Shown piece by piece: positions 7,416 to 41,583 of a stretch of 64,000 bases of DNA (position 1 is the stretch's first letter; every line of letters begins with the position of its first letter). Below the pieces are notes generated by a model, which saw nothing but the letters and a program-made list of their open reading frames with translations, was not told the origin of the DNA and ran no database searches. The stretch is from positions 62,001 through 126,000 of IMG/VR virus record IMGVR_UViG_3300009158_000031. One strand, given 5' to 3'. Position numbers and translations under genes: made by a program.

Positions 7416-8024
7416 ATGAAACATATACAAAGCTTCGACGATTTCTTAAATGAAGAAGAGAAGAAACCTAGAGTAGGTCATACTGTAAAAAGAGGACATT
7501 ACAAATCAGATCCACCCGATATTGGTCTTTATTCTAAAGGAGGAAGAGACGCAATTAAAGGAACTGGATATGCCAACAAAGAAAAGGCAGAATTTACGGT
7601 AAAAGAGTTAGATAAACTTATGGACAAAGGTGAAAACGTTTGGGCTATGTCAATTGCAACTACTATGGAATCTCGAGCTAAAAAACATCCTCATCAATCA
7701 GATGGAATGCGAGATGCCATGAAGATATTTCGTGAATGGATTGATAAAAATAAGAAAAGTGAAGGTGTTGAAGAAGCTGAAAGTAAAACTCTATTTTCTC
7801 CGGGTAAAGATGATGCAGTAAAAGGAACCGGTTATAAAGATGCAGAAGCGGCAAACAAAACAATCACCATCATTAATAAATTAAATAAAACCGATCATAG
7901 TCACGCAATGGCAATTGCTACGACTATGGAGAATCGAGCTAAAACCCATAAATTTAGCACACCTGATATGAAAGCTGCTGCCAAGATATTTAGAGAATGG
8001 ATTGATAAAAATAGAACTACATAA
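7416..8024 (+). CDS. hypothetical protein with two tandem ~70-aa domains
   Basis: DA.KGTGY...A..IATTME.RAK.H....M..A.KIFREWIDKN occurs twice; N-terminus MKHIQSFDDFLNE. Confidence 0.7.
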   Translation: MKHIQSFDDFLNEEEKKPRVGHTVKRGHYKSDPPDIGLYSKGGRDAIKGTGYANKEKAEFTVKELDKLMDKGENVWAMSIATTMESRAKKHPHQSDGMRDAMKIFREWIDKNKKSEGVEEAESKTLFSPGKDDAVKGTGYKDAEAANKTITIINKLNKTDHSHAMAIATTMENRAKTHKFSTPDMKAAAKIFREWIDKNRTT

Positions 8025-16811: not shown

Positions 16812-17303
16812 ATGAAATTTCTAAAAGTACGTAATGTGAAGTCACCTATCCGAGGAACTTCAAGATCTGCCGGTATCGATTTTTTTGTTCCTGATGAATG
16901 GAATGAAGGTCAACCATACTCAATACCTCCAGGAGGCAGAGTTCTAATTCCCAGTGGAATCAAAGTAAATGTAATTGATGGTCATGCTCTTATTGCTTTT
17001 AATAAGAGTGGAATTGCCACGAAGAAAGGTATTGTCGTAGGTGCTGAAGTAGTTGATGAAGATTACCAAGGAGAAATTCATTTACATATTATAAACACAA
17101 ATCAACTAACCGAAACTTTCGGTGATAGTGCTTATGCAATAGATACTGGTTATGTAGACATTATTCCAGGTGAAAAATTAATGCAATTTATTTTGCTACC
17201 TATTAATTATTCAATGCCAGAAGAAGTCGAAACCATCGATGATCTATATGATGGTGTTACTGAAAGAGGTGAAGGTGGATTTGGATCAACTGGATTAAAA
17301 TAA
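16812..17303 (+). CDS. dut: trimeric dUTPase
   Basis: SAGIDF, NKSG, VVDEDYQGEI, RGEGGFGSTG. Confidence 0.95.
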   Translation: MKFLKVRNVKSPIRGTSRSAGIDFFVPDEWNEGQPYSIPPGGRVLIPSGIKVNVIDGHALIAFNKSGIATKKGIVVGAEVVDEDYQGEIHLHIINTNQLTETFGDSAYAIDTGYVDIIPGEKLMQFILLPINYSMPEEVETIDDLYDGVTERGEGGFGSTGLK

Positions 17304-17316
17304 AAAAAAACAAATT

Positions 17317-22833: not shown

Positions 22834-23010
22834 ATGTACAACCTATACCCAAAATTTATTCATTACAATGAATATACGAAAAAATGGTTCGCTTTCGATA
22901 GAGAAGAAGCCGTTTTATATCTTAACGATAATACACAAATGGAATCTCTTAAAGAATACAATTCAATTGAAGATTTATTAAAGGACCATAAACAAAAAAC
23001 AAATGATTAA
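22834..23010 (+). CDS. 58-aa hypothetical protein (not in the ORF track)
   Basis: MYNLYPKFIHYNEYTKKWFAFDREEA...KTND; fills the gap and overlaps the polymerase C-subunit start. Confidence 0.5.
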   Translation: MYNLYPKFIHYNEYTKKWFAFDREEAVLYLNDNTQMESLKEYNSIEDLLKDHKQKTND

Positions 23011-24211
23011 TTTCAATCCAGAAAAAATTGCAATAGAAGATATTCCAGCACTTCTCGAATCCCTATCAGGTAAAGATCGAGAAGATGCTATAACCGCTCT
23101 TAAAGCCGAACAACTTCGATGCAGTACTCAGGAACAGGGAATTAAACTAATTATTAACTCAATTTATGGAGCCTTCGCGAATGAGTATTTTCACTTCTAT
23201 AATATTTCAGTTGCAGAAACAGTAACTCTTCAAGGACAAGATGCTATCAAATTTACTGAACGTATGGTTGATAAGTATTTCAAAGAATTCTTTCATCGAG
23301 ACAAACCTTTACTAACTGAATTAGGTGTTATCGAAAACCAAGTAGTTCCTAGAATCAAAGGTAATGTTTGGAAATATACCGATACGGATTCAGGTTATTT
23401 AATCTTCGAAGAATGTATGGAAGCGGTTCAATGGAAAGGTACCGTAAAAGAATTTGTTCTAACTCTTAATTCCTTTAGATTATCTGATTATATTAAGAAA
23501 GTTCTTAATGATTATGCCAAAACATTTCAAACCGAAAATTATCTAGATTTCGAATTAGAAACTATTGCAGAAAATGCAATTTGGGTAGCTAAGAAAAAAT
23601 ACATCCAAAATATCATTTGGAAAGATGGTAAAGATTACGATAATCTTTCATATATCAAAACAACTGGTCTAGAAATTATTCAATCATCAACTCCTGTATT
23701 TTGCAGAGGTAAACTTATCGATGCTGTAAAGTATATGTTCTCAAAAGGTAAGATTACCGAAAAAGACGTAAGTGATTTAGTTAAGCTAATCAAAGAAATC
23801 AAACGAGAATTTAAGCTATCTAATATTGAAAAAATTTCAATGGGTCGTTCGGTTTCCGATTATCAAAAATTTGTAATCAACGATAACGATAAGCTAGAAC
23901 TTCAAAAAGGTTGTCCTATTCATGTTCGAGCAGCAGCACATTACAATTATTTACTTAATCAAAATCCCAAACTTAAAGGTAAATACGAAATGATTCGATC
24001 AGGTGATAAGCTAAAATGGTATCATGCAAACGATTCATTTTGTGATGTATTCGCCTATAAAGCAGGAATGCATCCCATGGAAATTGCTCCTAAAATGAAT
24101 ATTGAAAGACAATTTCAAGGATCAATTCTAGATCCACTTAATCGAATCATAACGCCAACAGGTATTCCGGCTTTGAATCCTTCATTGGCATATACAGTAA
24201 GCCTTTTCTAA
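23003..24211 (+). CDS. 43B: family B DNA polymerase, C-terminal subunit (motifs B and C), gp43B-like
   Basis: KLIINSIYG, YTDTDS, AKKKYI, GLEIIQSSTP. Confidence 0.9.
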   Translation: MINFNPEKIAIEDIPALLESLSGKDREDAITALKAEQLRCSTQEQGIKLIINSIYGAFANEYFHFYNISVAETVTLQGQDAIKFTERMVDKYFKEFFHRDKPLLTELGVIENQVVPRIKGNVWKYTDTDSGYLIFEECMEAVQWKGTVKEFVLTLNSFRLSDYIKKVLNDYAKTFQTENYLDFELETIAENAIWVAKKKYIQNIIWKDGKDYDNLSYIKTTGLEIIQSSTPVFCRGKLIDAVKYMFSKGKITEKDVSDLVKLIKEIKREFKLSNIEKISMGRSVSDYQKFVINDNDKLELQKGCPIHVRAAAHYNYLLNQNPKLKGKYEMIRSGDKLKWYHANDSFCDVFAYKAGMHPMEIAPKMNIERQFQGSILDPLNRIITPTGIPALNPSLAYTVSLF

Positions 24212-31263: not shown

Positions 31264-32016
31264 ATGAGTATCAAATCTTACGACGAATTTGTAAACGAAC
31301 ATTTAATAGGAGCTTACTCTTATTACGGACAAGGGTCATTATACCCTATTGTAAAAAAATTAGCTGAAGAAGGAAAAACCCCTCAACAAGTTTATACCTA
31401 CCTTACAACTTTAGGAATTGACGAAGAACGCAAACAACGTGTTCTTGGTCAAGTATTTGAAAGAGTGAATGAAGGTTTATTTGAAGATGATGACATCCTT
31501 AAGGCTGATACATCTGACCTTACTAAAGGAATTCCACCATCAAAAGCTAAACCCGATGAAGATGTTAAAGATGCCTTAGATAAATTGAAAAAGGGAGATA
31601 GTGACGATATGGAAGATAAAGCAGAAGATGGTGAAACTAAAACTGACGATGATGATGCTTCCGCTAAAGTTGCTGCATTACAATCTGCTCTTAAAGATGC
31701 AGAAAAGCTAGAAAAAATCAAGAAAATCCTTGGAGAATCTATGGAAATGGAAATTGAAGGAATCGAAGATGAAGTATTAGTTGACGTTTTAGATTATCAT
31801 TTAGATGAAAAACTCGATCCTAAAGTTAGAGCTAAATTGAAAGACGACGATTTCGTATTTCCAGTTAAAAGATCATGGCCTATACATGACGAAAAACATG
31901 GTAAAACTGCATTAGTTTGGGCAACTTGGCCACAATATAAAGATCTTAAAAATGATATCGTTAAAGCCGTTATCAAAAAATATCCTAACCTTAAAGGTGT
32001 AGGTGCTGCAAAGTAA
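31264..32016 (+). CDS. putative internal head protein with C-terminal DUF6582-like domain
   Basis: MSIKSYDEFVNE; RAKLKDDDFVFP..RSWPIHDEKH. Confidence 0.6.
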   Translation: MSIKSYDEFVNEHLIGAYSYYGQGSLYPIVKKLAEEGKTPQQVYTYLTTLGIDEERKQRVLGQVFERVNEGLFEDDDILKADTSDLTKGIPPSKAKPDEDVKDALDKLKKGDSDDMEDKAEDGETKTDDDDASAKVAALQSALKDAEKLEKIKKILGESMEMEIEGIEDEVLVDVLDYHLDEKLDPKVRAKLKDDDFVFPVKRSWPIHDEKHGKTALVWATWPQYKDLKNDIVKAVIKKYPNLKGVGAAK

Positions 32017-32044
32017 AATCATTAAAACAAAAAAACATATAAAC

Positions 32045-33451
32045 ATGTCAAAATTAAAAACCGCTTTCGAATCTGCTTCTTTGAAAGATAGAGTTTCAAC
32101 TCTACTTGAGAGTATTGATAGAAACAACACATCTAAATTTATTGCTGAACGTATTCTTTCTAGATTCGCTACAGTAGAAGTTTCTGAAGGAACTACAACT
32201 GCAACTGATGCATACACATACCTAATGGGTAAAGGTGTTGAACAAGCAAAAGCAAAAAGTGTTGCTAATGCTGCTATCAACGAATCAACTTCACGGGTTG
32301 CTAATCCTTACTTAATTGAAAAGGTAAATATCATGAGAACCGCAGTTAAAGAATTATCTGCTTATTCTTGGATGCCAGTTATTAACGATTACATCAAAGA
32401 ATGTAATAACATCCTTGCTGAAAATGAATTTGCTATCTTAGTTGAATCTGTTATTTTTGATCTTGAAAATCACAGAGAATCTAAATTCTATATGAATGCA
32501 ATTAATAAACTTCGTGAATGTTCAAATGCAGAAAATCCAGTATTTGCCATATCTGAAGATCTTACATCAGAAAAATGGATTCCTCTAGTTAAACAATTAG
32601 TTGAATTTGCTGAAAAATCTAAAGGATCTCTTTCAGAAAGCGATAGTAACTACAAAGTTTCTAAAGTTTATTCTCCAGTTATCATTAACGAAGAAGAAAA
32701 ATCTTATACATTCTATTCTAACGGAAAAATGTTAACGATTAAAGGTGAAGAAATCACTGAATCTACAATTACTCCTGATGAAAAATTTAAAGGATTACTT
32801 AACTTAATGGAATCATCTACTATCGTTAAAAACGGTATGAGATTCTATCCTAAGGCTGGATCTATTTTAGATGTTACCTTCGAAGCAGATGGTACTAAAA
32901 TTACAGTTGATGGTAAATTGGTTGAAGCTGCTAATCTAGAAACACATTTACTTAAAACTGGTCTTTTCAAATTCAACGAAATCAATAAAGTTAATGTTAT
33001 CAATCGTGCAATTGCCGAAGGTGCAGAAATTAAAGATATGGATTTCGCTTACCGAGTTGAATCTAAAAAATTCCGTGGAGTATCTACAACTGTATTTACT
33101 ATTGCAGAAAATATCTACATTCAAAAGGTTAATCCTGCAATGAATGTTAATGAATTTGTTAAAGCTGAAACTGCTGAAGCCGCCGTATCAATCGTTAAAG
33201 AATTTATGAATTATGATATTACTAATTCTTTGACTAAATTGATTGAAGCTGAAGAAGTTACTAAAGCTAAAATTGCTGATGAAAACTCTAAAATTGAAAG
33301 AAAAATTCAATTCTTACAAGAGAAATTAGAAGAACTTAACAGAATCGAGAAATTATCCGTTTACGATATTGAGCATATAAATAAAGCGAAAGCTATAGTA
33401 GAGAGTGAAATTAACACTCAATCCGAAGAGCTTACAAAAAAAAACTCTTAA
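32045..33451 (+). CDS. hypothetical (probably virion/prohead) protein ending in an A9 slippery run
   Basis: About 468 aa with a coiled-coil C-terminus; ends ACA AAA AAA AAC TCT TAA. Confidence 0.7.
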   Translation: MSKLKTAFESASLKDRVSTLLESIDRNNTSKFIAERILSRFATVEVSEGTTTATDAYTYLMGKGVEQAKAKSVANAAINESTSRVANPYLIEKVNIMRTAVKELSAYSWMPVINDYIKECNNILAENEFAILVESVIFDLENHRESKFYMNAINKLRECSNAENPVFAISEDLTSEKWIPLVKQLVEFAEKSKGSLSESDSNYKVSKVYSPVIINEEEKSYTFYSNGKMLTIKGEEITESTITPDEKFKGLLNLMESSTIVKNGMRFYPKAGSILDVTFEADGTKITVDGKLVEAANLETHLLKTGLFKFNEINKVNVINRAIAEGAEIKDMDFAYRVESKKFRGVSTTVFTIAENIYIQKVNPAMNVNEFVKAETAEAAVSIVKEFMNYDITNSLTKLIEAEEVTKAKIADENSKIERKIQFLQEKLEELNRIEKLSVYDIEHINKAKAIVESEINTQSEELTKKNS

Positions 33452-33639
33452 TTGAAGCAAGTGACGATTATGTCGTTGCTACTTTAGCTGAACCCTTTAA
33501 AGGTTTGGCAAAAGGTGATTCAGTAAAGATGGACGCTTTAGATTTTACCAAAAGAGGAGATGATGATATGGTTGATATTATTATGCCTGATGGAAGTAAA
33601 GCTCAAGCGAAAAAAAGAATACTTTTCGCTAAAATTTAA
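33436..33639 (+). CDS. -1 frame extension of 32045..33451 (KKKLLIEASDDYVV...LFAKI)
   Basis: A 64-codon protein-like open frame starts at the A9 run with no start codon of its own and fills the gap to 33643. Confidence 0.6.
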   Translation, partial: KKKLLIEASDDYVVATLAEPFKGLAKGDSVKMDALDFTKRGDDDMVDIIMPDGSKAQAKKRILFAKI

Positions 33640-33642
33640 AAA

Positions 33643-33999
33643 ATGGCAATATACGTAAAACCAAAAGAACTATACGAAGAAATTTGTATATCACTAGAGC
33701 AAAAGAAACTAACTCCAAAGGCGGAGAAGATGCTCATATTAATAGCTGAACGAGCTAATCAAAAGCTAAGATATGAAAATCCAATGGACCGAGAGGATTG
33801 TATCGCTTTTGCTCTTTTGGATTTGTTCAAGTACTGGGATCGATTCAAACCAGAAAAAACTAAAAACGCATTTGCATTCTATACACAAGTTGCAAAGAAT
33901 GCATATGCTAAAGGATGGAATAAACTACATCCAGGTAAATACAAAGGAACTTTATCACTTGATGGTGGTATGGATCGCGAAGGTATCTACTCAATATAA
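33643..33999 (+). CDS. 55: late-transcription sigma factor, gp55-like, very short
   Basis: YVKPKEL..REDCI..FKPEKTKNAFAFYTQ matches the gp55 region-2 pattern (F.PEKS.N.FAYFTQ). Confidence 0.75.
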   Translation: MAIYVKPKELYEEICISLEQKKLTPKAEKMLILIAERANQKLRYENPMDREDCIAFALLDLFKYWDRFKPEKTKNAFAFYTQVAKNAYAKGWNKLHPGKYKGTLSLDGGMDREGIYSI

Positions 34000-34007
34000 A
34001 ATATAAT

Positions 34008-34286
34008 ATGAGCACTATTAAAACATTTTCGGAATTCATTAATGAAGCTGCAAGAAGCAATGAAGCTCTTAAGTATGTAACTTCTAAATACAAAGATCAA
34101 CGAATTAATTCAGTTACATTTAATGAAGTTCTAGTTCCTTTAGCTAATCACCTAGATGATTATGCTGATAGAGAAATGGGTGATTTAGAGTATTCGAAGA
34201 AAACATTTGCTGCTTTTAAAGCTCTAGTAGATTTAATGGTCGTGGATCAAATCGAATCAGACAAATATCATCGAGGGGAAATATAA
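34008..34286 (+). CDS. putative internal head protein
   Basis: MSTIKTFSEFINE start. Confidence 0.6.
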   Translation: MSTIKTFSEFINEAARSNEALKYVTSKYKDQRINSVTFNEVLVPLANHLDDYADREMGDLEYSKKTFAAFKALVDLMVVDQIESDKYHRGEI

Positions 34287-34295
34287 AATAATTGA

Positions 34296-34691
34296 ATGTA
34301 CGCAATTAAAACCTTTTCAGAATTCGTTAATGAAGGTAAAACTTCAGGATTTAATAGAACTTATACTATGGGTTCTACTTGGTGGGCTTTATGGAAAATT
34401 GAAAACAAAGAAGATTATACTATAAAACAAGATTCTTTTACTAAAACTTTCGAAGTGTATACTAAAGATAAAGAACCTAAATTATCTTTCGTTTTTGATT
34501 ATGGTCGTAATGTAGTTTTCACCAATGATTCACCTAAACAATTTGAGTTAAAAAGAGTTGATCCTAAAGCAAAAGCTAAAGCCGAAGAAACCGATGCCGA
34601 AACTGGTAAAAAAGAAGTTCTTCCTGGTGGAACTCCAAAAGAGGAAGAAGCAGAAGGTGAATTAGAAACCGATAAAACAGAAGAAGAATAA
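34296..34691 (+). CDS. putative internal head protein
   Basis: MYAIKTFSEFVNE start; acidic tail. Confidence 0.6.
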   Translation: MYAIKTFSEFVNEGKTSGFNRTYTMGSTWWALWKIENKEDYTIKQDSFTKTFEVYTKDKEPKLSFVFDYGRNVVFTNDSPKQFELKRVDPKAKAKAEETDAETGKKEVLPGGTPKEEEAEGELETDKTEEE

Positions 34692-35628: not shown

Positions 35629-35931
35629 ATGAAAAATTTAATGTCTTTCGACGAATTCGTAGTTAATGAAGCTGGTAAATACGATGCTTCAGGATTTAAT
35701 CCGGCAGCAGAAGCTACTAGCGATGAATTCAATCAAGAATTAACTCCAGGAAAAAAATACAATGTTAAAAAAGGAGAAGAAACTTCTCTTTGCATTTATC
35801 AAGGTAATACTGACGGAGTTTATATCTTCAACCCAGAAGCTAAAGAAGATGGTATAACTACTTCTCCATGTGAATTTACTGAAGCTGAATATGCTGCTGC
35901 ATTTAAAGCTGGTGAAATCGTTGCTGCTTAA
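35629..35931 (+). CDS. putative internal head protein, single copy of a small beta domain
   Basis: MKNLMSFDEFVVNE; LTPGKKY..IYQG..DGVYIFN. Confidence 0.65.
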   Translation: MKNLMSFDEFVVNEAGKYDASGFNPAAEATSDEFNQELTPGKKYNVKKGEETSLCIYQGNTDGVYIFNPEAKEDGITTSPCEFTEAEYAAAFKAGEIVAA

Positions 35932-35952: not shown

Positions 35953-36738
35953 ATGAAGAATCTAAAAACATTTTCTGAATTCGTATCAGAAGCCGCTGAA
36001 TTTAATCCAGCTAATACATCTGATATAGATGTTCTATTGCCTGCAATTAAATCTGCATCAGAGCTAATGCCTGGTAAAGAATACGTCATTAAATTAGATG
36101 GTAAAACTCATTCGAATATGATGTATCAAGGAGTAAGTGATGGTAGTTATATCTTCAATTCCGAAGATATGGAAACTGTGCTTAATCTTAAGGATGACCA
36201 AATTAATAGTGCTGTTTCTGATGGTGGTGTTCAACCAGTAAATGAAGCAGTTAAAAGAACTGCAGATCAAGTAAATAAAGATGCAGAAGATCGAATCAAA
36301 AATCAAATTGCTCGTTATTCAGAAATGATGAAATCTAAACCAGAAAAAGCTAATGTTTATAAAGCTCAATTGGATTTAGCTCATGCTAAAATGACGGTTG
36401 TTAATTTGAAGAAAAAGGTTGATGCTCTAAGAGAATCTACCGAATTAGATGAATCTAAACTTTATAAAGGAAAAGAAGTTTTACCTGATTATATTGATCC
36501 ACGAAGAGATTTTGGTGCTCCTGTTAAAAACAGTAAAGAGTTAAAAGTTGGTGCTGAATATGTTATATATGAGCCTGGAATGGATAACTGGCAAGCAGAA
36601 AACATTTATCAAGGTTACACTGGTGGAATTCATATATTCAATTCATCTACACAATTTGGTGAAGCGGAACCTCTAGAATTAACTGACAAAGAATTAGAAT
36701 CAGCTATTAAAGATGGCGAAATTATTAAACAAAACTAA
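35953..36738 (+). CDS. putative internal head polyprotein with two copies of the same small domain
   Basis: MKNLKTFSEFVSE; L.PG.EY..YQG...G..IFN twice, separated by VNEA and LDES sites. Confidence 0.65.
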   Translation: MKNLKTFSEFVSEAAEFNPANTSDIDVLLPAIKSASELMPGKEYVIKLDGKTHSNMMYQGVSDGSYIFNSEDMETVLNLKDDQINSAVSDGGVQPVNEAVKRTADQVNKDAEDRIKNQIARYSEMMKSKPEKANVYKAQLDLAHAKMTVVNLKKKVDALRESTELDESKLYKGKEVLPDYIDPRRDFGAPVKNSKELKVGAEYVIYEPGMDNWQAENIYQGYTGGIHIFNSSTQFGEAEPLELTDKELESAIKDGEIIKQN

Positions 36739-39681: not shown

Positions 39682-41583
39682 ATGAGTCAAAAGTATTTGC
39701 TCGTATTGGAAAGATCTTCTTCTGAATTGGACATCAAAACAGAAGGTGACAATTACATCCTAGAAGGAATCTTTACAGAAATCGGCGTTAAAAACAAAAA
39801 CAATCGTATTTACGACGAAAAGGAAGTTCTTCCTCACATAGATGAACTTCTTCAAAAAGTAAAAGGAAGTAAACTTTTAGGTGAATTAGATCATCCTAAA
39901 TCTTTTGAAGTTTCTTTAAAAAATGCTTCTCATGTTATTGAAGCTTTAGATTACGACAAAAACACTAAGAAGGTAATGGGAAGAATCCGTTTACTTAATA
40001 CTAGTGCTGGAAAAGAAGCAAAGGCTCTGGTTGATGCTGGTATTCCTTTACACATTTCTAGTCGTGCTGCTGGAGTGGTTGAAAGTAATGGTCACGTTAA
40101 AATCAAAAAAATGTTTACTTACGATTTAGTTGCAGATCCTGGATTTGCTAATGCTGAATTATCAAGAGTAAATGAAGCATTTGGATTTGAAATGGATGAT
40201 ACATTAGGTCTTTACGAAATGCCTTATAGTGCTAAATTAGCCGAGTCTTTCGAAGATCACGAAAAAATTGATGAAAACAAACAAACTCAAAACATAAACA
40301 AATCTTCAAAAATGAATAATACAACAGAGAACATATCAGTTGAAGATTTTAACGAATATACAAAAATCGTTAAAAACGAAATTGAAAATCTTAAAAAACA
40401 AATCGCTGAAAGTAACACTGATTCTGTAACTGAAAGTACTGAATCATTAGTTAAGTACACTGAAACTATTGCCAAACGAGTAAATCAAATCCAAGAAAAT
40501 TTAGGATCTTTAAAAGAGAACTTCGATCATTTGATATCTCACAATGATTACATCGTAGAAAACCTTGAAAAGGTTAAAGATTACGCTGAAATGGTTGGCG
40601 AAAAATCAAATCAAGGAATTAACTACTCAGAAAAACTTGCTGAATCGGTTGACCACTTAATTGAATATACTAAAATGGTTGCTGAAAAAGCAGATAGTGG
40701 AATTTCTTACACTGAAAGAATTGCTGAATCTGTTGATTCTTCGATCGAATATCAAAATCATGTTGCTAAAGAAGTTAATGAGCGTTTTGCTTATCAAACT
40801 TACATCAATGAACAAGTTGACAATATCATTTCACATACCGATTATATCGTTGAAGGTTGTGATTCAATTATTAAGTACAGTGAGTACCTAAAAGAGAATC
40901 AAGCAAGCTTAACCGGTTATATGGATTATGTTGTTAAAGGTCTTAACGAAGGTACTTCTAATAACGATCCATCCGATAATAACAAATCTGAAAATGCAAA
41001 CGAAGATGATACTAAAGTAAATGAAAATGCTGAAGCTATCAATTCAACTGAAAGTGCTGATGATTTTGAAAATGAAATTAACTCTAGAGTTGATGCTATT
41101 TTAGAATCTGCTAAATCCCAAAAAGATGAAGAGAAAAAATCTAAAATGCATTTCTTTAATTTCTTAGCTGAATCTAAAAGAAACGAATTTGAATCTTTAA
41201 CTGCTGAAGTTCAAGAAAAAATTGTTGATCTTTTCGAAAATACTAAATGGTACGGATCAATTGATGCTAATAACATCTGGGAATCTGCTTTCACTAAACC
41301 AGTTGCTAAAAATGATTGGTTAGCTAATATGCCAAATCGTTATAACGAAGCTTGGAATTCTTTAAACGAATCTCAAAAGAATGCTATTAAAGCTCAAGCA
41401 TCAGTAAGAGTTCTTAGTACACAATATCAAATCGATTCATTTTGGTCTTCAAGAGATTTAAGAGTTTCTAAAGTAGAATCAACTGAACCGGTTGCTCCTA
41501 TTAACGAATCTTCTAAGTATGAAACTCCTCAAGATTATATGGATACTGTTGCTGCTGAATTAAAACGTAGATTCAAAAGATAA
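39682..41583 (+). CDS. 21: prohead protease (gp21) fused to scaffold/core region (gp22-like)
   Basis: LEGIF, NRIY, LGELDHP, ISSRAAG, YDLVADPGF, followed by ~450 aa of acidic coiled-coil with many xxE sites. Confidence 0.9.
   Translation: MSQKYLLVLERSSSELDIKTEGDNYILEGIFTEIGVKNKNNRIYDEKEVLPHIDELLQKVKGSKLLGELDHPKSFEVSLKNASHVIEALDYDKNTKKVMGRIRLLNTSAGKEAKALVDAGIPLHISSRAAGVVESNGHVKIKKMFTYDLVADPGFANAELSRVNEAFGFEMDDTLGLYEMPYSAKLAESFEDHEKIDENKQTQNINKSSKMNNTTENISVEDFNEYTKIVKNEIENLKKQIAESNTDSVTESTESLVKYTETIAKRVNQIQENLGSLKENFDHLISHNDYIVENLEKVKDYAEMVGEKSNQGINYSEKLAESVDHLIEYTKMVAEKADSGISYTERIAESVDSSIEYQNHVAKEVNERFAYQTYINEQVDNIISHTDYIVEGCDSIIKYSEYLKENQASLTGYMDYVVKGLNEGTSNNDPSDNNKSENANEDDTKVNENAEAINSTESADDFENEINSRVDAILESAKSQKDEEKKSKMHFFNFLAESKRNEFESLTAEVQEKIVDLFENTKWYGSIDANNIWESAFTKPVAKNDWLANMPNRYNEAWNSLNESQKNAIKAQASVRVLSTQYQIDSFWSSRDLRVSKVESTEPVAPINESSKYETPQDYMDTVAAELKRRFKR

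What the first reader, a model, noticed from the sequence alone, without database searches (positions are those of the whole stretch)
33431..33639. Probable programmed -1 frameshift or slippage at an A9 run
Seen: ORF 32045 ends ACA AAA AAA AAC TCT TAA, with the heptamer A AAA AAC in canonical X XXY YYZ phase. The -1 frame stays open for 64 codons (LLIEASDDYVVATLAEPFKGLAKGDSVKMD...), has no good start of its own, begins with a gp21-type LIE site and fills the gap to the gp55 gene. A hairpin AGCAA-G-TGAC/GTCG-TTGCT lies 10 nt downstream. Inference: short and long isoforms of a prohead protein are made at a fixed ratio.
Basis: partly seen in the sequence, partly recalled or inferred. Interest (0 to 1): 0.6.

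Follow-up and report, generated by a model that had tools for sequence, protein, structure and literature searches.

The report
Conserved A9 recoding site in phage gene
In a large T4-like freshwater phage, a run of nine A's at the end of a 468-codon gene is a conserved frame-switching site: a share of the product most likely continues in the -1 frame and gains a 64-residue SH3-like end domain, which distant relatives encode in frame in the same gene.

Summary

- **The site.** ORF 32045..33451 ends ACA AAA AAA AAC TCT TAA. The -1 frame is open to 33639, 4 nt before the gp55-like gene.
- **Conservation.** A9+CTCTTAA is identical in 21 distinct public contigs from 7 lineages, down to 65% protein identity.
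- **Coding signal.** Codon periodicity switches from frame 0 to frame -1 at the run. pN/pS is 0.29 between the stop and the first conserved ATG, with no stops. No start codon is conserved there.
- **Relatives.** A profile of the -1 product finds a family of C-terminal domains. Two distant homologues of the same core protein carry the domain in frame, one at the same genome position. About 40 other homologues carry a different small domain there, also in frame.
- **Not an error or pseudogene.** This is the only A9-or-longer run inside coding sequence in the 254 kb genome.
- **Mechanism: open.** I favour RNA polymerase slippage at A9 (about 0.5) over ribosomal -1 shifting (about 0.33). One contig has A10 and a single fused ORF; its library type is unknown.
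- **Not shown.** The isoform ratio, a prohead location and cleavage at the conserved L-x-E remain inferences.

The parts
32045..33451 (+). Frame-0 ORF of the core protein (468 aa, P0001). The model has an N-terminal helical region, a central beta-rich region and a C-terminal antiparallel coiled-coil hairpin. Function unknown.
   Evidence: 48 homologues found. No Pfam or PHROG hit. AlphaFold model of homologue P0017 has pLDDT 77. Fold matches are only uncharacterised phage proteins and generic coiled coils.
33436..33444 (+). A9 run: the shift site. It holds the in-phase heptamers A_AAA_AAA (33436-33442) and, with C 33445, A_AAA_AAC.
   Evidence: Exactly A9 in 21 distinct contigs of 7 lineages, while the preceding codon varies (ACA, TCA, GCA). 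Only A9-or-longer run in coding sequence in the genome. 12-fold depletion of such runs in the window.
33445..33451 (+). Invariant CTCTTAA. It reads (AA)C TCT TAA in frame 0 (Asn-Ser-stop) and CTC TTA A.. in frame -1 (Leu-Leu).
   Evidence: No change in 7 lineages. This holds even at 33448, where T>C would be synonymous in both frames.
33445..33639 (+). -1 frame extension: 64 codons plus stop, encoding an SH3-like C-terminal domain. The predicted long product is 531 aa.
   Evidence: pN/pS 0.29 (stop to ATG) and 0.20 (ATG to end), with no stops in the -1 frame. Profile search gives 33 hits, always C-terminal and full length. Model pLDDT 85, but in only 1 of 5 models. SH3 matches at Z 6.6, rmsd about 2 A over 50-55 residues.
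33448..33456 (+). L-I-E in the -1 frame: a putative prohead-protease (gp21-type) cleavage motif directly before the domain.
   Evidence: Aligns with [V/I/L]-x-E before the same domain in 15 of the 17 aligned sequences. The Glu column is 90% or more conserved. gp21 cleaves after Glu with an L/I-x-E logo (PMC9026906). Cleavage itself is inferred.
33456..33480 (+). Modest hairpin 10 nt downstream of the heptamer.
   Evidence: -7.8 to -11.9 kcal/mol in 6 of 7 lineages, z from -1.3 to -4.2; absent or shifted in L037. Consensus of 7 pairs at -3.35 kcal/mol, with one compensatory pair.
33643..33999 (+). gp55-like late sigma factor gene (context). It starts 4 nt after the end of the -1 ORF.
   Evidence: PHROG 234, E = 7.6e-12.
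39682..41583 (+). gp21-like prohead maturation protease gene (context for the proposed L-x-E cleavage).
   Evidence: PHROG 207, E = 5.6e-42.

Best explanation
This is a conserved programmed recoding site.

Shown by comparison:
- The gene has two parts. A 468-codon core lies in frame 0, and a 64-codon SH3-like domain lies in frame -1.
- The two parts are joined only through the A9 run.

Inferred mechanism:
- While the host RNA polymerase transcribes the A9 template, a share of the transcripts gain one extra A (A10).
- Ordinary translation of those transcripts gives a 531-aa protein reading ...E L T K K K L L I E A S D D Y V V ... A K I.
- Unslipped transcripts give the 468-aa protein ending K K N S.
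- Ribosomal -1 slippage on the same run may add to the long form.

Inferred fate of the long form:
- The domain is preceded by a conserved L-x-E motif.
- The long form is therefore probably a head-associated protein whose terminal domain the gp21-like prohead protease can release.
For: 1. A9+CTCTTAA is invariant in 21 distinct public contigs and 7 lineages, down to 65% core identity. The codon before it varies (ACA, TCA, GCA) and the flanks vary.
2. Substitutions peak at frame-0 third positions upstream of the run: 33 changes, against 22 and 14 at the other two positions. They peak at frame -1 third positions downstream: 26 against 13 and 11. In the 77 nt between the stop and the first conserved ATG, pN/pS is 0.29 with no stops in the -1 frame; the other two frames give 0.85 and 1.17 with 13 and 27 stops. 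An indel of 3 nt keeps the frame.
3. No start codon is conserved: TTG 33505 is TTA in L038 and L039, and ATT 33451 is ACT, ACC or ACA elsewhere.
4. The domain profile matches over positions 2-64, which includes the part upstream of the ATG. It matches C-terminal domains of 33 proteins. P0079 combines the core (E = 5e-20) and the domain (E = 8e-11) in one ORF, in the same gp15-...-gp55-...-portal neighbourhood. P0083 does the same.
5. All of the roughly 40 homologues at 50% identity or less carry a C-terminal small domain in frame, and total 526-777 aa against the predicted 531.
6. In favour of RNA polymerase slippage: nine A's or T's is the length at which bacterial RNA polymerase slips efficiently, mostly adding bases. 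A_AAA_AAC and A_AAA_AAA are poor ribosomal shift sites in E. coli (PMC5009743). Runs of A9 or longer are purged from this genome. The downstream hairpin is weak and missing in one lineage. One contig, 99.4% identical to L008, carries A10 and a single 509-aa ORF.
Against: - No read-level data could be had. Only Logan contigs were available, and contigs drop minor variants.
- One RNA-library contig (run X4) spans the site with plain A9. In runs X6 and X7 the contigs break near the site, which proves nothing.
- The library type of the A10 contig (JGI 3300024556) is unknown. It could be a DNA variant or an assembly error.
- The in-phase heptamers, the frame-0 stop two codons downstream and a hairpin at the same place in 6 of 7 lineages are equally what a ribosomal -1 site would look like.
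- The host, and hence its tRNA-Lys set and polymerase behaviour, is unknown.
- No protein evidence exists for either isoform.
- The SH3-like model is confident in only 1 of 5 AlphaFold models.
Confidence: 0.5

Rival explanations
1. Programmed -1 ribosomal frameshifting. Ribosomes slip back one base on A_AAA_AAA or A_AAA_AAC, helped by the downstream hairpin and the nearby frame-0 stop. The same 531-aa product results, with junction TKKN-LLIE if the A-site tRNA is Asn.
For: - The heptamers are in phase.
- A hairpin lies 10-11 nt downstream in 6 of 7 lineages, with z reaching -4.2 in L051.
- CTCTTAA is invariant, including a site that is synonymous in both frames.
- A_AAA_AAC is a used shift site in IS1 (from my own knowledge) and in archaeal virus tail genes (PMC5009743).
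- All the comparative evidence for recoding applies equally here.
Against: - An A9 run always contains an in-phase heptamer, so the phase carries no information.
- In E. coli these heptamers shift far less than A_AAA_AAG, and no lineage has moved to AAG.
- The hairpin is weak (consensus -3.35 kcal/mol, mostly G-U pairs, one compensatory change) and lies in conserved coding sequence. It is lost in L037.
- A 10-nt spacer is longer than usual.
Confidence: 0.33
2. DNA-level length variation of the tract, working as a contingency locus. Phage populations hold A9 and A10 genomes, and the long protein is made only from the A10 genomes.
For: One public contig has A10 and a single fused ORF, and is otherwise 99.4% identical to an A9 contig.
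Against: - A9 stands in 21 contigs against A10 in 1.
- About 20 of the 25 listed cluster members are 468 aa and none has the fused length.
- If the fused form alone were needed, an A10 interrupted by AAG would be stable and should have taken over in at least one of the 7 lineages.
Confidence: 0.08
3. Two separate genes. The -1 ORF is a small independent gene started at ATG 33529 or TTG 33505, or by re-initiation after the stop.
For: Gene callers annotate 36- and 44-aa proteins here. AAAGGTGAT lies 9 nt before ATG 33529.
Against: - Coding constraint in the -1 frame starts right after the run, upstream of both candidate starts.
- The TTG is not conserved.
- The homologous domain always includes the upstream part (profile positions 2-64), and the model's first two strands lie there.
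- No free-standing protein of this family lacks that part, except the truncated gene calls at this very locus.
Confidence: 0.04
4. Artefact or decay. Either this is a homopolymer sequencing error in a single ORF, or a recent frameshift mutation has left a dying 3' end.
For: Homopolymers are error-prone, and one contig shows A10.
Against: - The same A9 appears in independent JGI, ENA and Logan assemblies from many samples and 7 lineages.
- The -1 ORF is under purifying selection and has no stops.
Confidence: 0.02

Closest known systems
Thermus thermophilus dnaX, and bacterial IS elements that use transcriptional slippage at a run of nine A/T
   Same: There is a run of exactly nine A's in the coding strand. 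A stop lies close by in the template frame. Two products with a common N-terminal part would arise from mRNAs with and without an extra base (PMC5009743).
   Different: In dnaX the full-length product is in the template frame and slippage makes the short one; here slippage would make the long one. Slippage is not shown here. The gene is a phage gene of unknown function, and the polymerase is that of an unknown host.
Phage T7/T3 capsid protein 10A/10B, and the class of phage structural proteins that gain a C-terminal (often Ig-like) domain by -1 or +1 frameshifting
   Same: A minor long isoform shares the whole short protein and adds one small folded C-terminal domain. Relatives carry such domains in frame or out of frame, as if mobile domains landed by non-homologous recombination (PMC5009743). 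Here relatives carry either the same domain in frame or a different one in frame.
   Different: The domain is SH3-like, not Ig-like. The carrier is not the major capsid protein, and its place in the virion is unknown. The shift site is a 9-base homopolymer rather than a minimal heptamer with a strong stimulator.
Lambda gpG/gpGT tail assembly chaperone frameshift
   Same: It is a conserved -1 event near the end of a phage morphogenesis-region gene that sets a ratio of short to long product.
   Different: The gene family, slippery sequence (G_GGA_AAG in lambda, from my own knowledge) and genome position all differ. Here the extension is a domain family shared with capsid-targeted proteins.
T4 internal proteins and Alt: head-packaged proteins processed by gp21 after L/I-x-E
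   Same: The -1 domain family sits on proteins whose N-termini look like the T4 capsid targeting sequence. It is preceded by [L/I/V]-x-E. The genome has a gp21-like protease. In T4, Alt is also processed C-terminally (PMC9026906).
   Different: The core protein itself has no CTS-like N-terminus. No cleavage or packaging has been shown. T4 is not known to make such proteins by recoding.

Membership tests
Programmed -1 ribosomal frameshift site | Slippery heptamer X_XXY_YYZ in the frame-0 phase | tested here: met
   A_AAA_AAA at 33436-33442 and A_AAA_AAC at 33439-33445. Any A9 run meets this.
Programmed -1 ribosomal frameshift site | Stimulatory RNA structure about 5-9 nt downstream, supported by covariation | tested here: inconclusive
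   The hairpin lies 10 nt downstream, at -7.8 to -11.9 kcal/mol in 6 of 7 lineages. The consensus has 7 pairs at -3.35 kcal/mol with one compensatory pair. It is lost in L037. No Rfam frameshift element was found.
Programmed -1 ribosomal frameshift site | Shift site and overlapping ORF conserved in relatives, with coding constraint in the new frame | tested here: met
   7 lineages and 21 contigs. pN/pS is 0.29 and 0.20 in the -1 frame, and no start codon is conserved.
Programmed -1 ribosomal frameshift site | Trans-frame protein made from unaltered mRNA | not testable with these tools
   This needs proteomics together with RNA sequencing.
Programmed transcriptional slippage site (bacterial RNA polymerase) | Homopolymeric A or T run of about 9 or more in the transcribed region | tested here: met
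   A9 at 33436-33444. The length threshold is from PMC5009743.
Programmed transcriptional slippage site (bacterial RNA polymerase) | Run length conserved among relatives, while such runs are otherwise avoided | tested here: met
   Exactly A9 in 21 contigs. There are three runs of A9 or longer in 254 kb and only this one is in an ORF. The window has 2 against 24.5 expected.
Programmed transcriptional slippage site (bacterial RNA polymerase) | RNA heterogeneous in run length while DNA is homogeneous | tested here: inconclusive
   Only contigs could be laid. An RNA-library contig shows A9, and two other RNA runs break near the site. One A10 contig comes from a library of unknown type.
Phage proteins with a C-terminal domain added by frameshift (T7 10B / Ig-like class) | The extension is an independently folding domain also found in frame on other phage proteins | tested here: met
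   33 profile hits, always C-terminal and in frame, including on two core homologues. SH3-like model.
Phage proteins with a C-terminal domain added by frameshift (T7 10B / Ig-like class) | The carrier is a virion structural protein | not testable with these tools
   Only the neighbourhood is known: gp15-like gene, CTS-like ORFs, gp55, gp4, gp2, portal, protease and major capsid protein.
Phage proteins with a C-terminal domain added by frameshift (T7 10B / Ig-like class) | The domain is Ig-like | tested here: not met
   The best structural matches are all SH3 domains.
T4-type gp21-processed head proteins | L/I-x-E motif at the processing point, and a gp21-like protease in the genome | tested here: met
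   L-I-E or L-T-E directly after the shift. The motif is conserved before the domain across the family. The protease gene is at 39682..41583.
T4-type gp21-processed head proteins | N-terminal capsid targeting sequence | tested here: not met
   P0001 starts MSKLKTAFESASLKD and does not fit the motif that 12 other ORFs of the genome fit.

The most novel reading that the evidence does not exclude
A T4-like phage uses programmed transcriptional slippage at an A9 tract to give a fraction of a head-associated protein an SH3-like cargo domain, which the prohead protease then releases at a conserved L-x-E site. The same protein family would show three evolutionary solutions side by side: a different domain in frame, the same domain in frame, and the same domain in the -1 frame. 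That would make it a natural test bed for why recoding is kept instead of a simple fusion.
Probability: 0.35. Interest if true: 0.7.

Novelty: new member of a known kind. Interest (0 to 1): 0.6.

Why it matters
- **Annotation.** Gene callers split this locus into a 468-aa protein and a meaningless 36- or 44-aa stub. The real unit is one gene with two products.
- **Recoding in T4-like phages.** As far as I know, and as far as the 2016 recoding review that I searched by term shows, the recoding event described for the T4 group is the gene 60 bypass. I know of no shift-site extension of a morphogenesis-region protein there.
- **A ready-made comparison.** The family offers relatives with the same domain in frame, relatives with another domain in frame, and one natural A10 variant. 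These can be used to ask what the short:long ratio is for.
- **Mechanism.** The site could help settle how often long A runs in phage genes act through the polymerase rather than the ribosome.
- **Limits.** The organism is uncultured, the function of the core protein is unknown and no expression data exist. The finding is solid as comparative genomics but modest in reach.

Tried and rejected
- **Family scans.** Pfam and PHROGs found nothing for the core or the -1 product.
- **Phage collection.** blastn found no match. tblastn found one unannotated 462 kb uncultured phage at 26-30% identity.
- **Domain comparison.** hhalign of the -1 domain against the 'PGKEY' domain of the in-frame homologues found no similarity (probability 0.1%). 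I therefore dropped the idea that the -1 domain is a diverged copy of it.
- **Fold of the core.** Foldseek against the PDB found nothing at E <= 0.001. VIA-align matched only the coiled-coil hairpin. BFVD returned only uncharacterised proteins and one hit named 'DNA ligase 1' that I do not trust. The ESM Atlas gave no usable hit.
- **Rfam.** No frameshift element was found.
- **Reads.** All four runs were served as Logan contigs only, so minor run-length variants could not be seen. 951 letters were laid, within the operators' limit.
- **The A10 sample.** Two paper searches for the sample identifiers found nothing, so its library type stays unknown.
- **Own genome.** It has no second copy of the -1 domain.
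- **Shine-Dalgarno sequence before ATG 33529.** I considered it, but genes here generally lack such sequences, and constraint starts upstream of the ATG.
- **The fused protein.** I did not type or join the two frames into one protein. The natural in-frame variant P0087 (from L047) served as its stand-in.
- **Operators' restrictions.** No alternative genetic code was used.
Full report
**Setting**

The window is bases 62001-126000 of a 254,393-base IMG/VR virus record with about 32% G+C. It is a T4-like phage. Around the finding lie these genes:
- upstream: nrdA, a DNA polymerase part, uvsX, a gp41-type helicase, gp47 and gp46, then a gp15-like gene;
- at the finding: the gene in question, followed by a gp55-like late sigma factor;
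- downstream: gp4 (head closure), gp2, the gp20 portal, a gp21-like prohead protease and the major head protein.

**The observation**

- ORF 32045..33451 (468 aa, P0001) ends ACA AAA AAA AAC TCT TAA.
- The run is exactly A9 (33436-33444).
- The -1 frame reads KKK LLIEASDDYVVATLAEPFKGLAKGDSVKMD...AKI. It stays open for 64 codons from 33445 to a stop at 33637-33639, 4 nt before the gp55-like ATG.
- The hairpin at 33456-33480 exists but is modest (-11.9 kcal/mol, z = -2.3).

Such runs are rare here. The window has 2 A9 runs against 24.5 +/- 7.6 expected. The whole genome has three runs of A9 or longer and none of T9 or longer. The other two are intergenic.

**Not an error and not decay**

Related DNA came from IMG/VR, JGI metagenomes, ENA and Logan assemblies.
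- The string A9+CTCTTAA is identical in 21 distinct contigs, which fall into 7 sequence lineages with core identity from 100% down to 65%.
- The codon just before the run varies (ACA, TCA, GCA) and both flanks vary.
- Of the 25 members listed from the protein clusters of these lineages, about 20 are 468 aa. The rest are fragments or an alternative start call, and none has the fused length.

**The -1 frame is translated from the run onward**

- Counted over the 7 lineages, minimal substitutions upstream of the run peak at the frame-0 third position: 33, against 22 and 14 at the other two positions.
- Between the frame-0 stop and ATG 33529 they peak at the frame -1 third position: 26, against 13 and 11. 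The same holds beyond the ATG: 33, against 16 and 10.
- Among six lineages, pairwise pN/pS in the -1 frame is 0.29 for stop to ATG and 0.20 for ATG to end, with no stops. That matches 0.30 for the core ORF. The other two frames give 0.85-2.4 with many stops.
- One lineage has a 3-nt insertion, which keeps the frame.
- No start codon is conserved. TTG 33505 is TTA in two lineages, and ATT 33451 is ACT, ACC or ACA elsewhere.
- Ribosomes can therefore reach this frame only from the upstream ORF.

**Relatives encode the join in one frame**

The word search with P0001 gave 48 homologues.
- Those at 65% identity or more are 468 aa (one is 445 aa) and end in KKNS.
- All of the roughly 40 at 50% identity or less are single ORFs of 526-777 aa.
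- These continue after the same coiled coil into a linker and a small 'PGKEY...YQGxTDGxHIFN' domain, with no homopolymer at the junction.
- That domain is not detectably related to the -1 product.

A profile of the -1 product (alignment A7) was then scored against 1.84 billion proteins and found 33 proteins.
- In almost all of them the match covers profile positions 2-64 and ends at the C-terminus.
- Most carriers begin with an N-terminus like the T4 capsid targeting sequence.
- Two carriers are distant homologues of the core itself.
  - P0079 (487 aa) matches the core at E = 5e-20 and the domain at E = 8e-11, with 41% identity over 58 residues starting at DDYVVATL.
  - P0083 (752 aa) matches the core at E = 6e-16.
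- P0079 lies in the same neighbourhood: a gp15-like gene, a small ORF, P0079, a 121-aa ORF, and then the portal.

The predicted long product of 531 aa thus has the architecture of the whole family.

**The domain**

- The AlphaFold model of the 64 residues has mean pLDDT 85, but in only one of five models.
- It is a small beta barrel. Its best solved matches are all SH3 domains: Foldseek probability 0.96-1.0 with TM 0.55-0.71, and VIA-align Z 6.6 with rmsd about 2 A over 50-55 residues.
- Its first two strands are encoded upstream of ATG 33529.
- I take 'SH3-like' as a fold label only.

**The junction motif**

- In the alignment of the domain family, the window's L-L-I-E|A-S-D-D-Y-V-V-A-T-L lines up with (V/I/L)-x-E|(A/S/G)-x-D-E-F-V-x-A-T-L in the carriers. 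The Glu is conserved in 90% or more of them.
- T4 gp21 cleaves after Glu with an L/I-x-E logo. It removes the 10-residue targeting peptide of the internal proteins and also trims Alt at its C-terminus (PMC9026906).
- With a gp21-like protease in the genome, release of the domain inside the head is a reasonable inference, and nothing more.
- The two Leu codons are also fixed by the overlap with TCT TAA.

**Mechanism**

Both routes give a 531-aa product.

In favour of RNA polymerase slippage:
- Nine A's or T's is where bacterial polymerase slips efficiently, mostly adding bases (PMC5009743).
- In E. coli, A_AAA_AAC and A_AAA_AAA shift much less than A_AAA_AAG (PMC5009743).
- Such runs are purged from this genome.
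- The hairpin is weak. Its consensus energy is -3.35 kcal/mol, it has one compensatory pair, it lies in conserved coding sequence, and it is lost in L037.

In favour of a ribosomal shift:
- The hairpin is present at the same place in 6 of 7 lineages, with z = -4.2 in L051.
- The frame-0 stop is close by.
- CTCTTAA is invariant.
- The in-phase heptamer is not evidence either way, because any A9 run holds one.

The reads could not decide. All four runs were served as contigs. One RNA-library contig spans the site with A9. Two other RNA runs break near it.

**The A10 contig**

- One JGI contig (sample 3300024556, L047 = L050) is 99.4% identical to the A9 contig L008 over 2,387 bases. It has A10 and hence a single 509-aa ORF, P0087.
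- It may be a slipped transcript captured in an RNA assembly, a DNA variant, or an error. I could not find the sample's library type.
- It shows that the fused form is one base away. Yet it has not replaced A9 in any of the 7 lineages, which argues that A9, and hence a mixture of products, is selected.

**What the protein does**

- This is unknown. There are no family hits.
- The model of homologue P0017 (pLDDT 77) shows a helical N-terminal part, a beta-rich middle and a long helical hairpin. Structural neighbours exist only among uncharacterised proteins of Tenacibaculum phages and uncultured myoviruses.
- 'Prohead protein' rests on gene neighbourhood and on the company the domain keeps.

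**Verdict**

- This is a real, conserved recoding site, and a new member of the known class in which a phage protein gains a C-terminal domain by a frame change.
- My confidence that the two ORFs are one gene joined at the run is about 0.85-0.9.
- As the main route I put transcriptional slippage at about 0.5 and a ribosomal -1 shift at about 0.33.

Noticed in passing
window 7416..8024, 31264..32016, 34008..34286, 34296..34691, 35629..35931, 35953..36738; genome 5084, 133186, 135418, 135671, 217410, 218420: Twelve ORFs of the genome begin with M..(T/S)(F/Y)x(E/D)F(L/V/I)x(x)E, for example MSTIKTFSEFINE|A. This closely resembles the T4 internal-protein capsid targeting sequence with its gp21 cleavage site, and points to a large set of head-packaged proteins.
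   Followed up: partly
window 35629..35931 and 35953..36738 (two copies); C-termini of loci L017-L036: A small 'PGKEY...YQGxTDGxHIFN...P...GEI' domain with no Pfam match recurs. It occurs on CTS-like ORFs of this genome and as the in-frame C-terminal domain of all distant homologues of the core protein.
   Followed up: partly
proteins P0055-P0074: Carriers of the SH3-like domain look like polyproteins. They have a CTS-like N-terminus and then modules separated by repeated (S)VNE|(A/G/S) motifs, as if the prohead protease cuts them into several small proteins.
   Followed up: no
window 17302..17310; genome 217303..217312: These are the only other runs of A9 or longer in the 254 kb genome (an A9 and an A10). 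Both lie just after stop codons, in intergenic DNA.
   Followed up: partly
L047 / L050 1938..1947 (JGI 3300024556, Ga0256341_1006331): A near-identical relative of L008 carries A10 instead of A9, giving one 509-aa ORF. The library type is unknown.
   Followed up: partly
window 33505..33639 and equivalents in L037, L039-L046, L052: Public gene calls annotate 44-aa or 36-aa 'hypothetical proteins' here (TTG or ATG start). These are truncated pieces of the -1 domain.
   Followed up: yes
window 32020..32045, 33625..33645 and other gene starts: Genes are preceded by A-rich leaders without Shine-Dalgarno sequences. The nearest structural relatives of the core are in Tenacibaculum phages. Both hint at a Bacteroidota host.
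   Followed up: no
window 39682..41583: The gp21-like prohead protease ORF is 633 aa, but only residues 15-379 match the protease family. The long C-terminal part may be a fused scaffold-like region.
   Followed up: no
window 23003..24211: A 402-aa ORF matches only the C-terminal part of the T4-type DNA polymerase profile (positions 498-839 of 856). The polymerase may be split into two genes.
   Followed up: no
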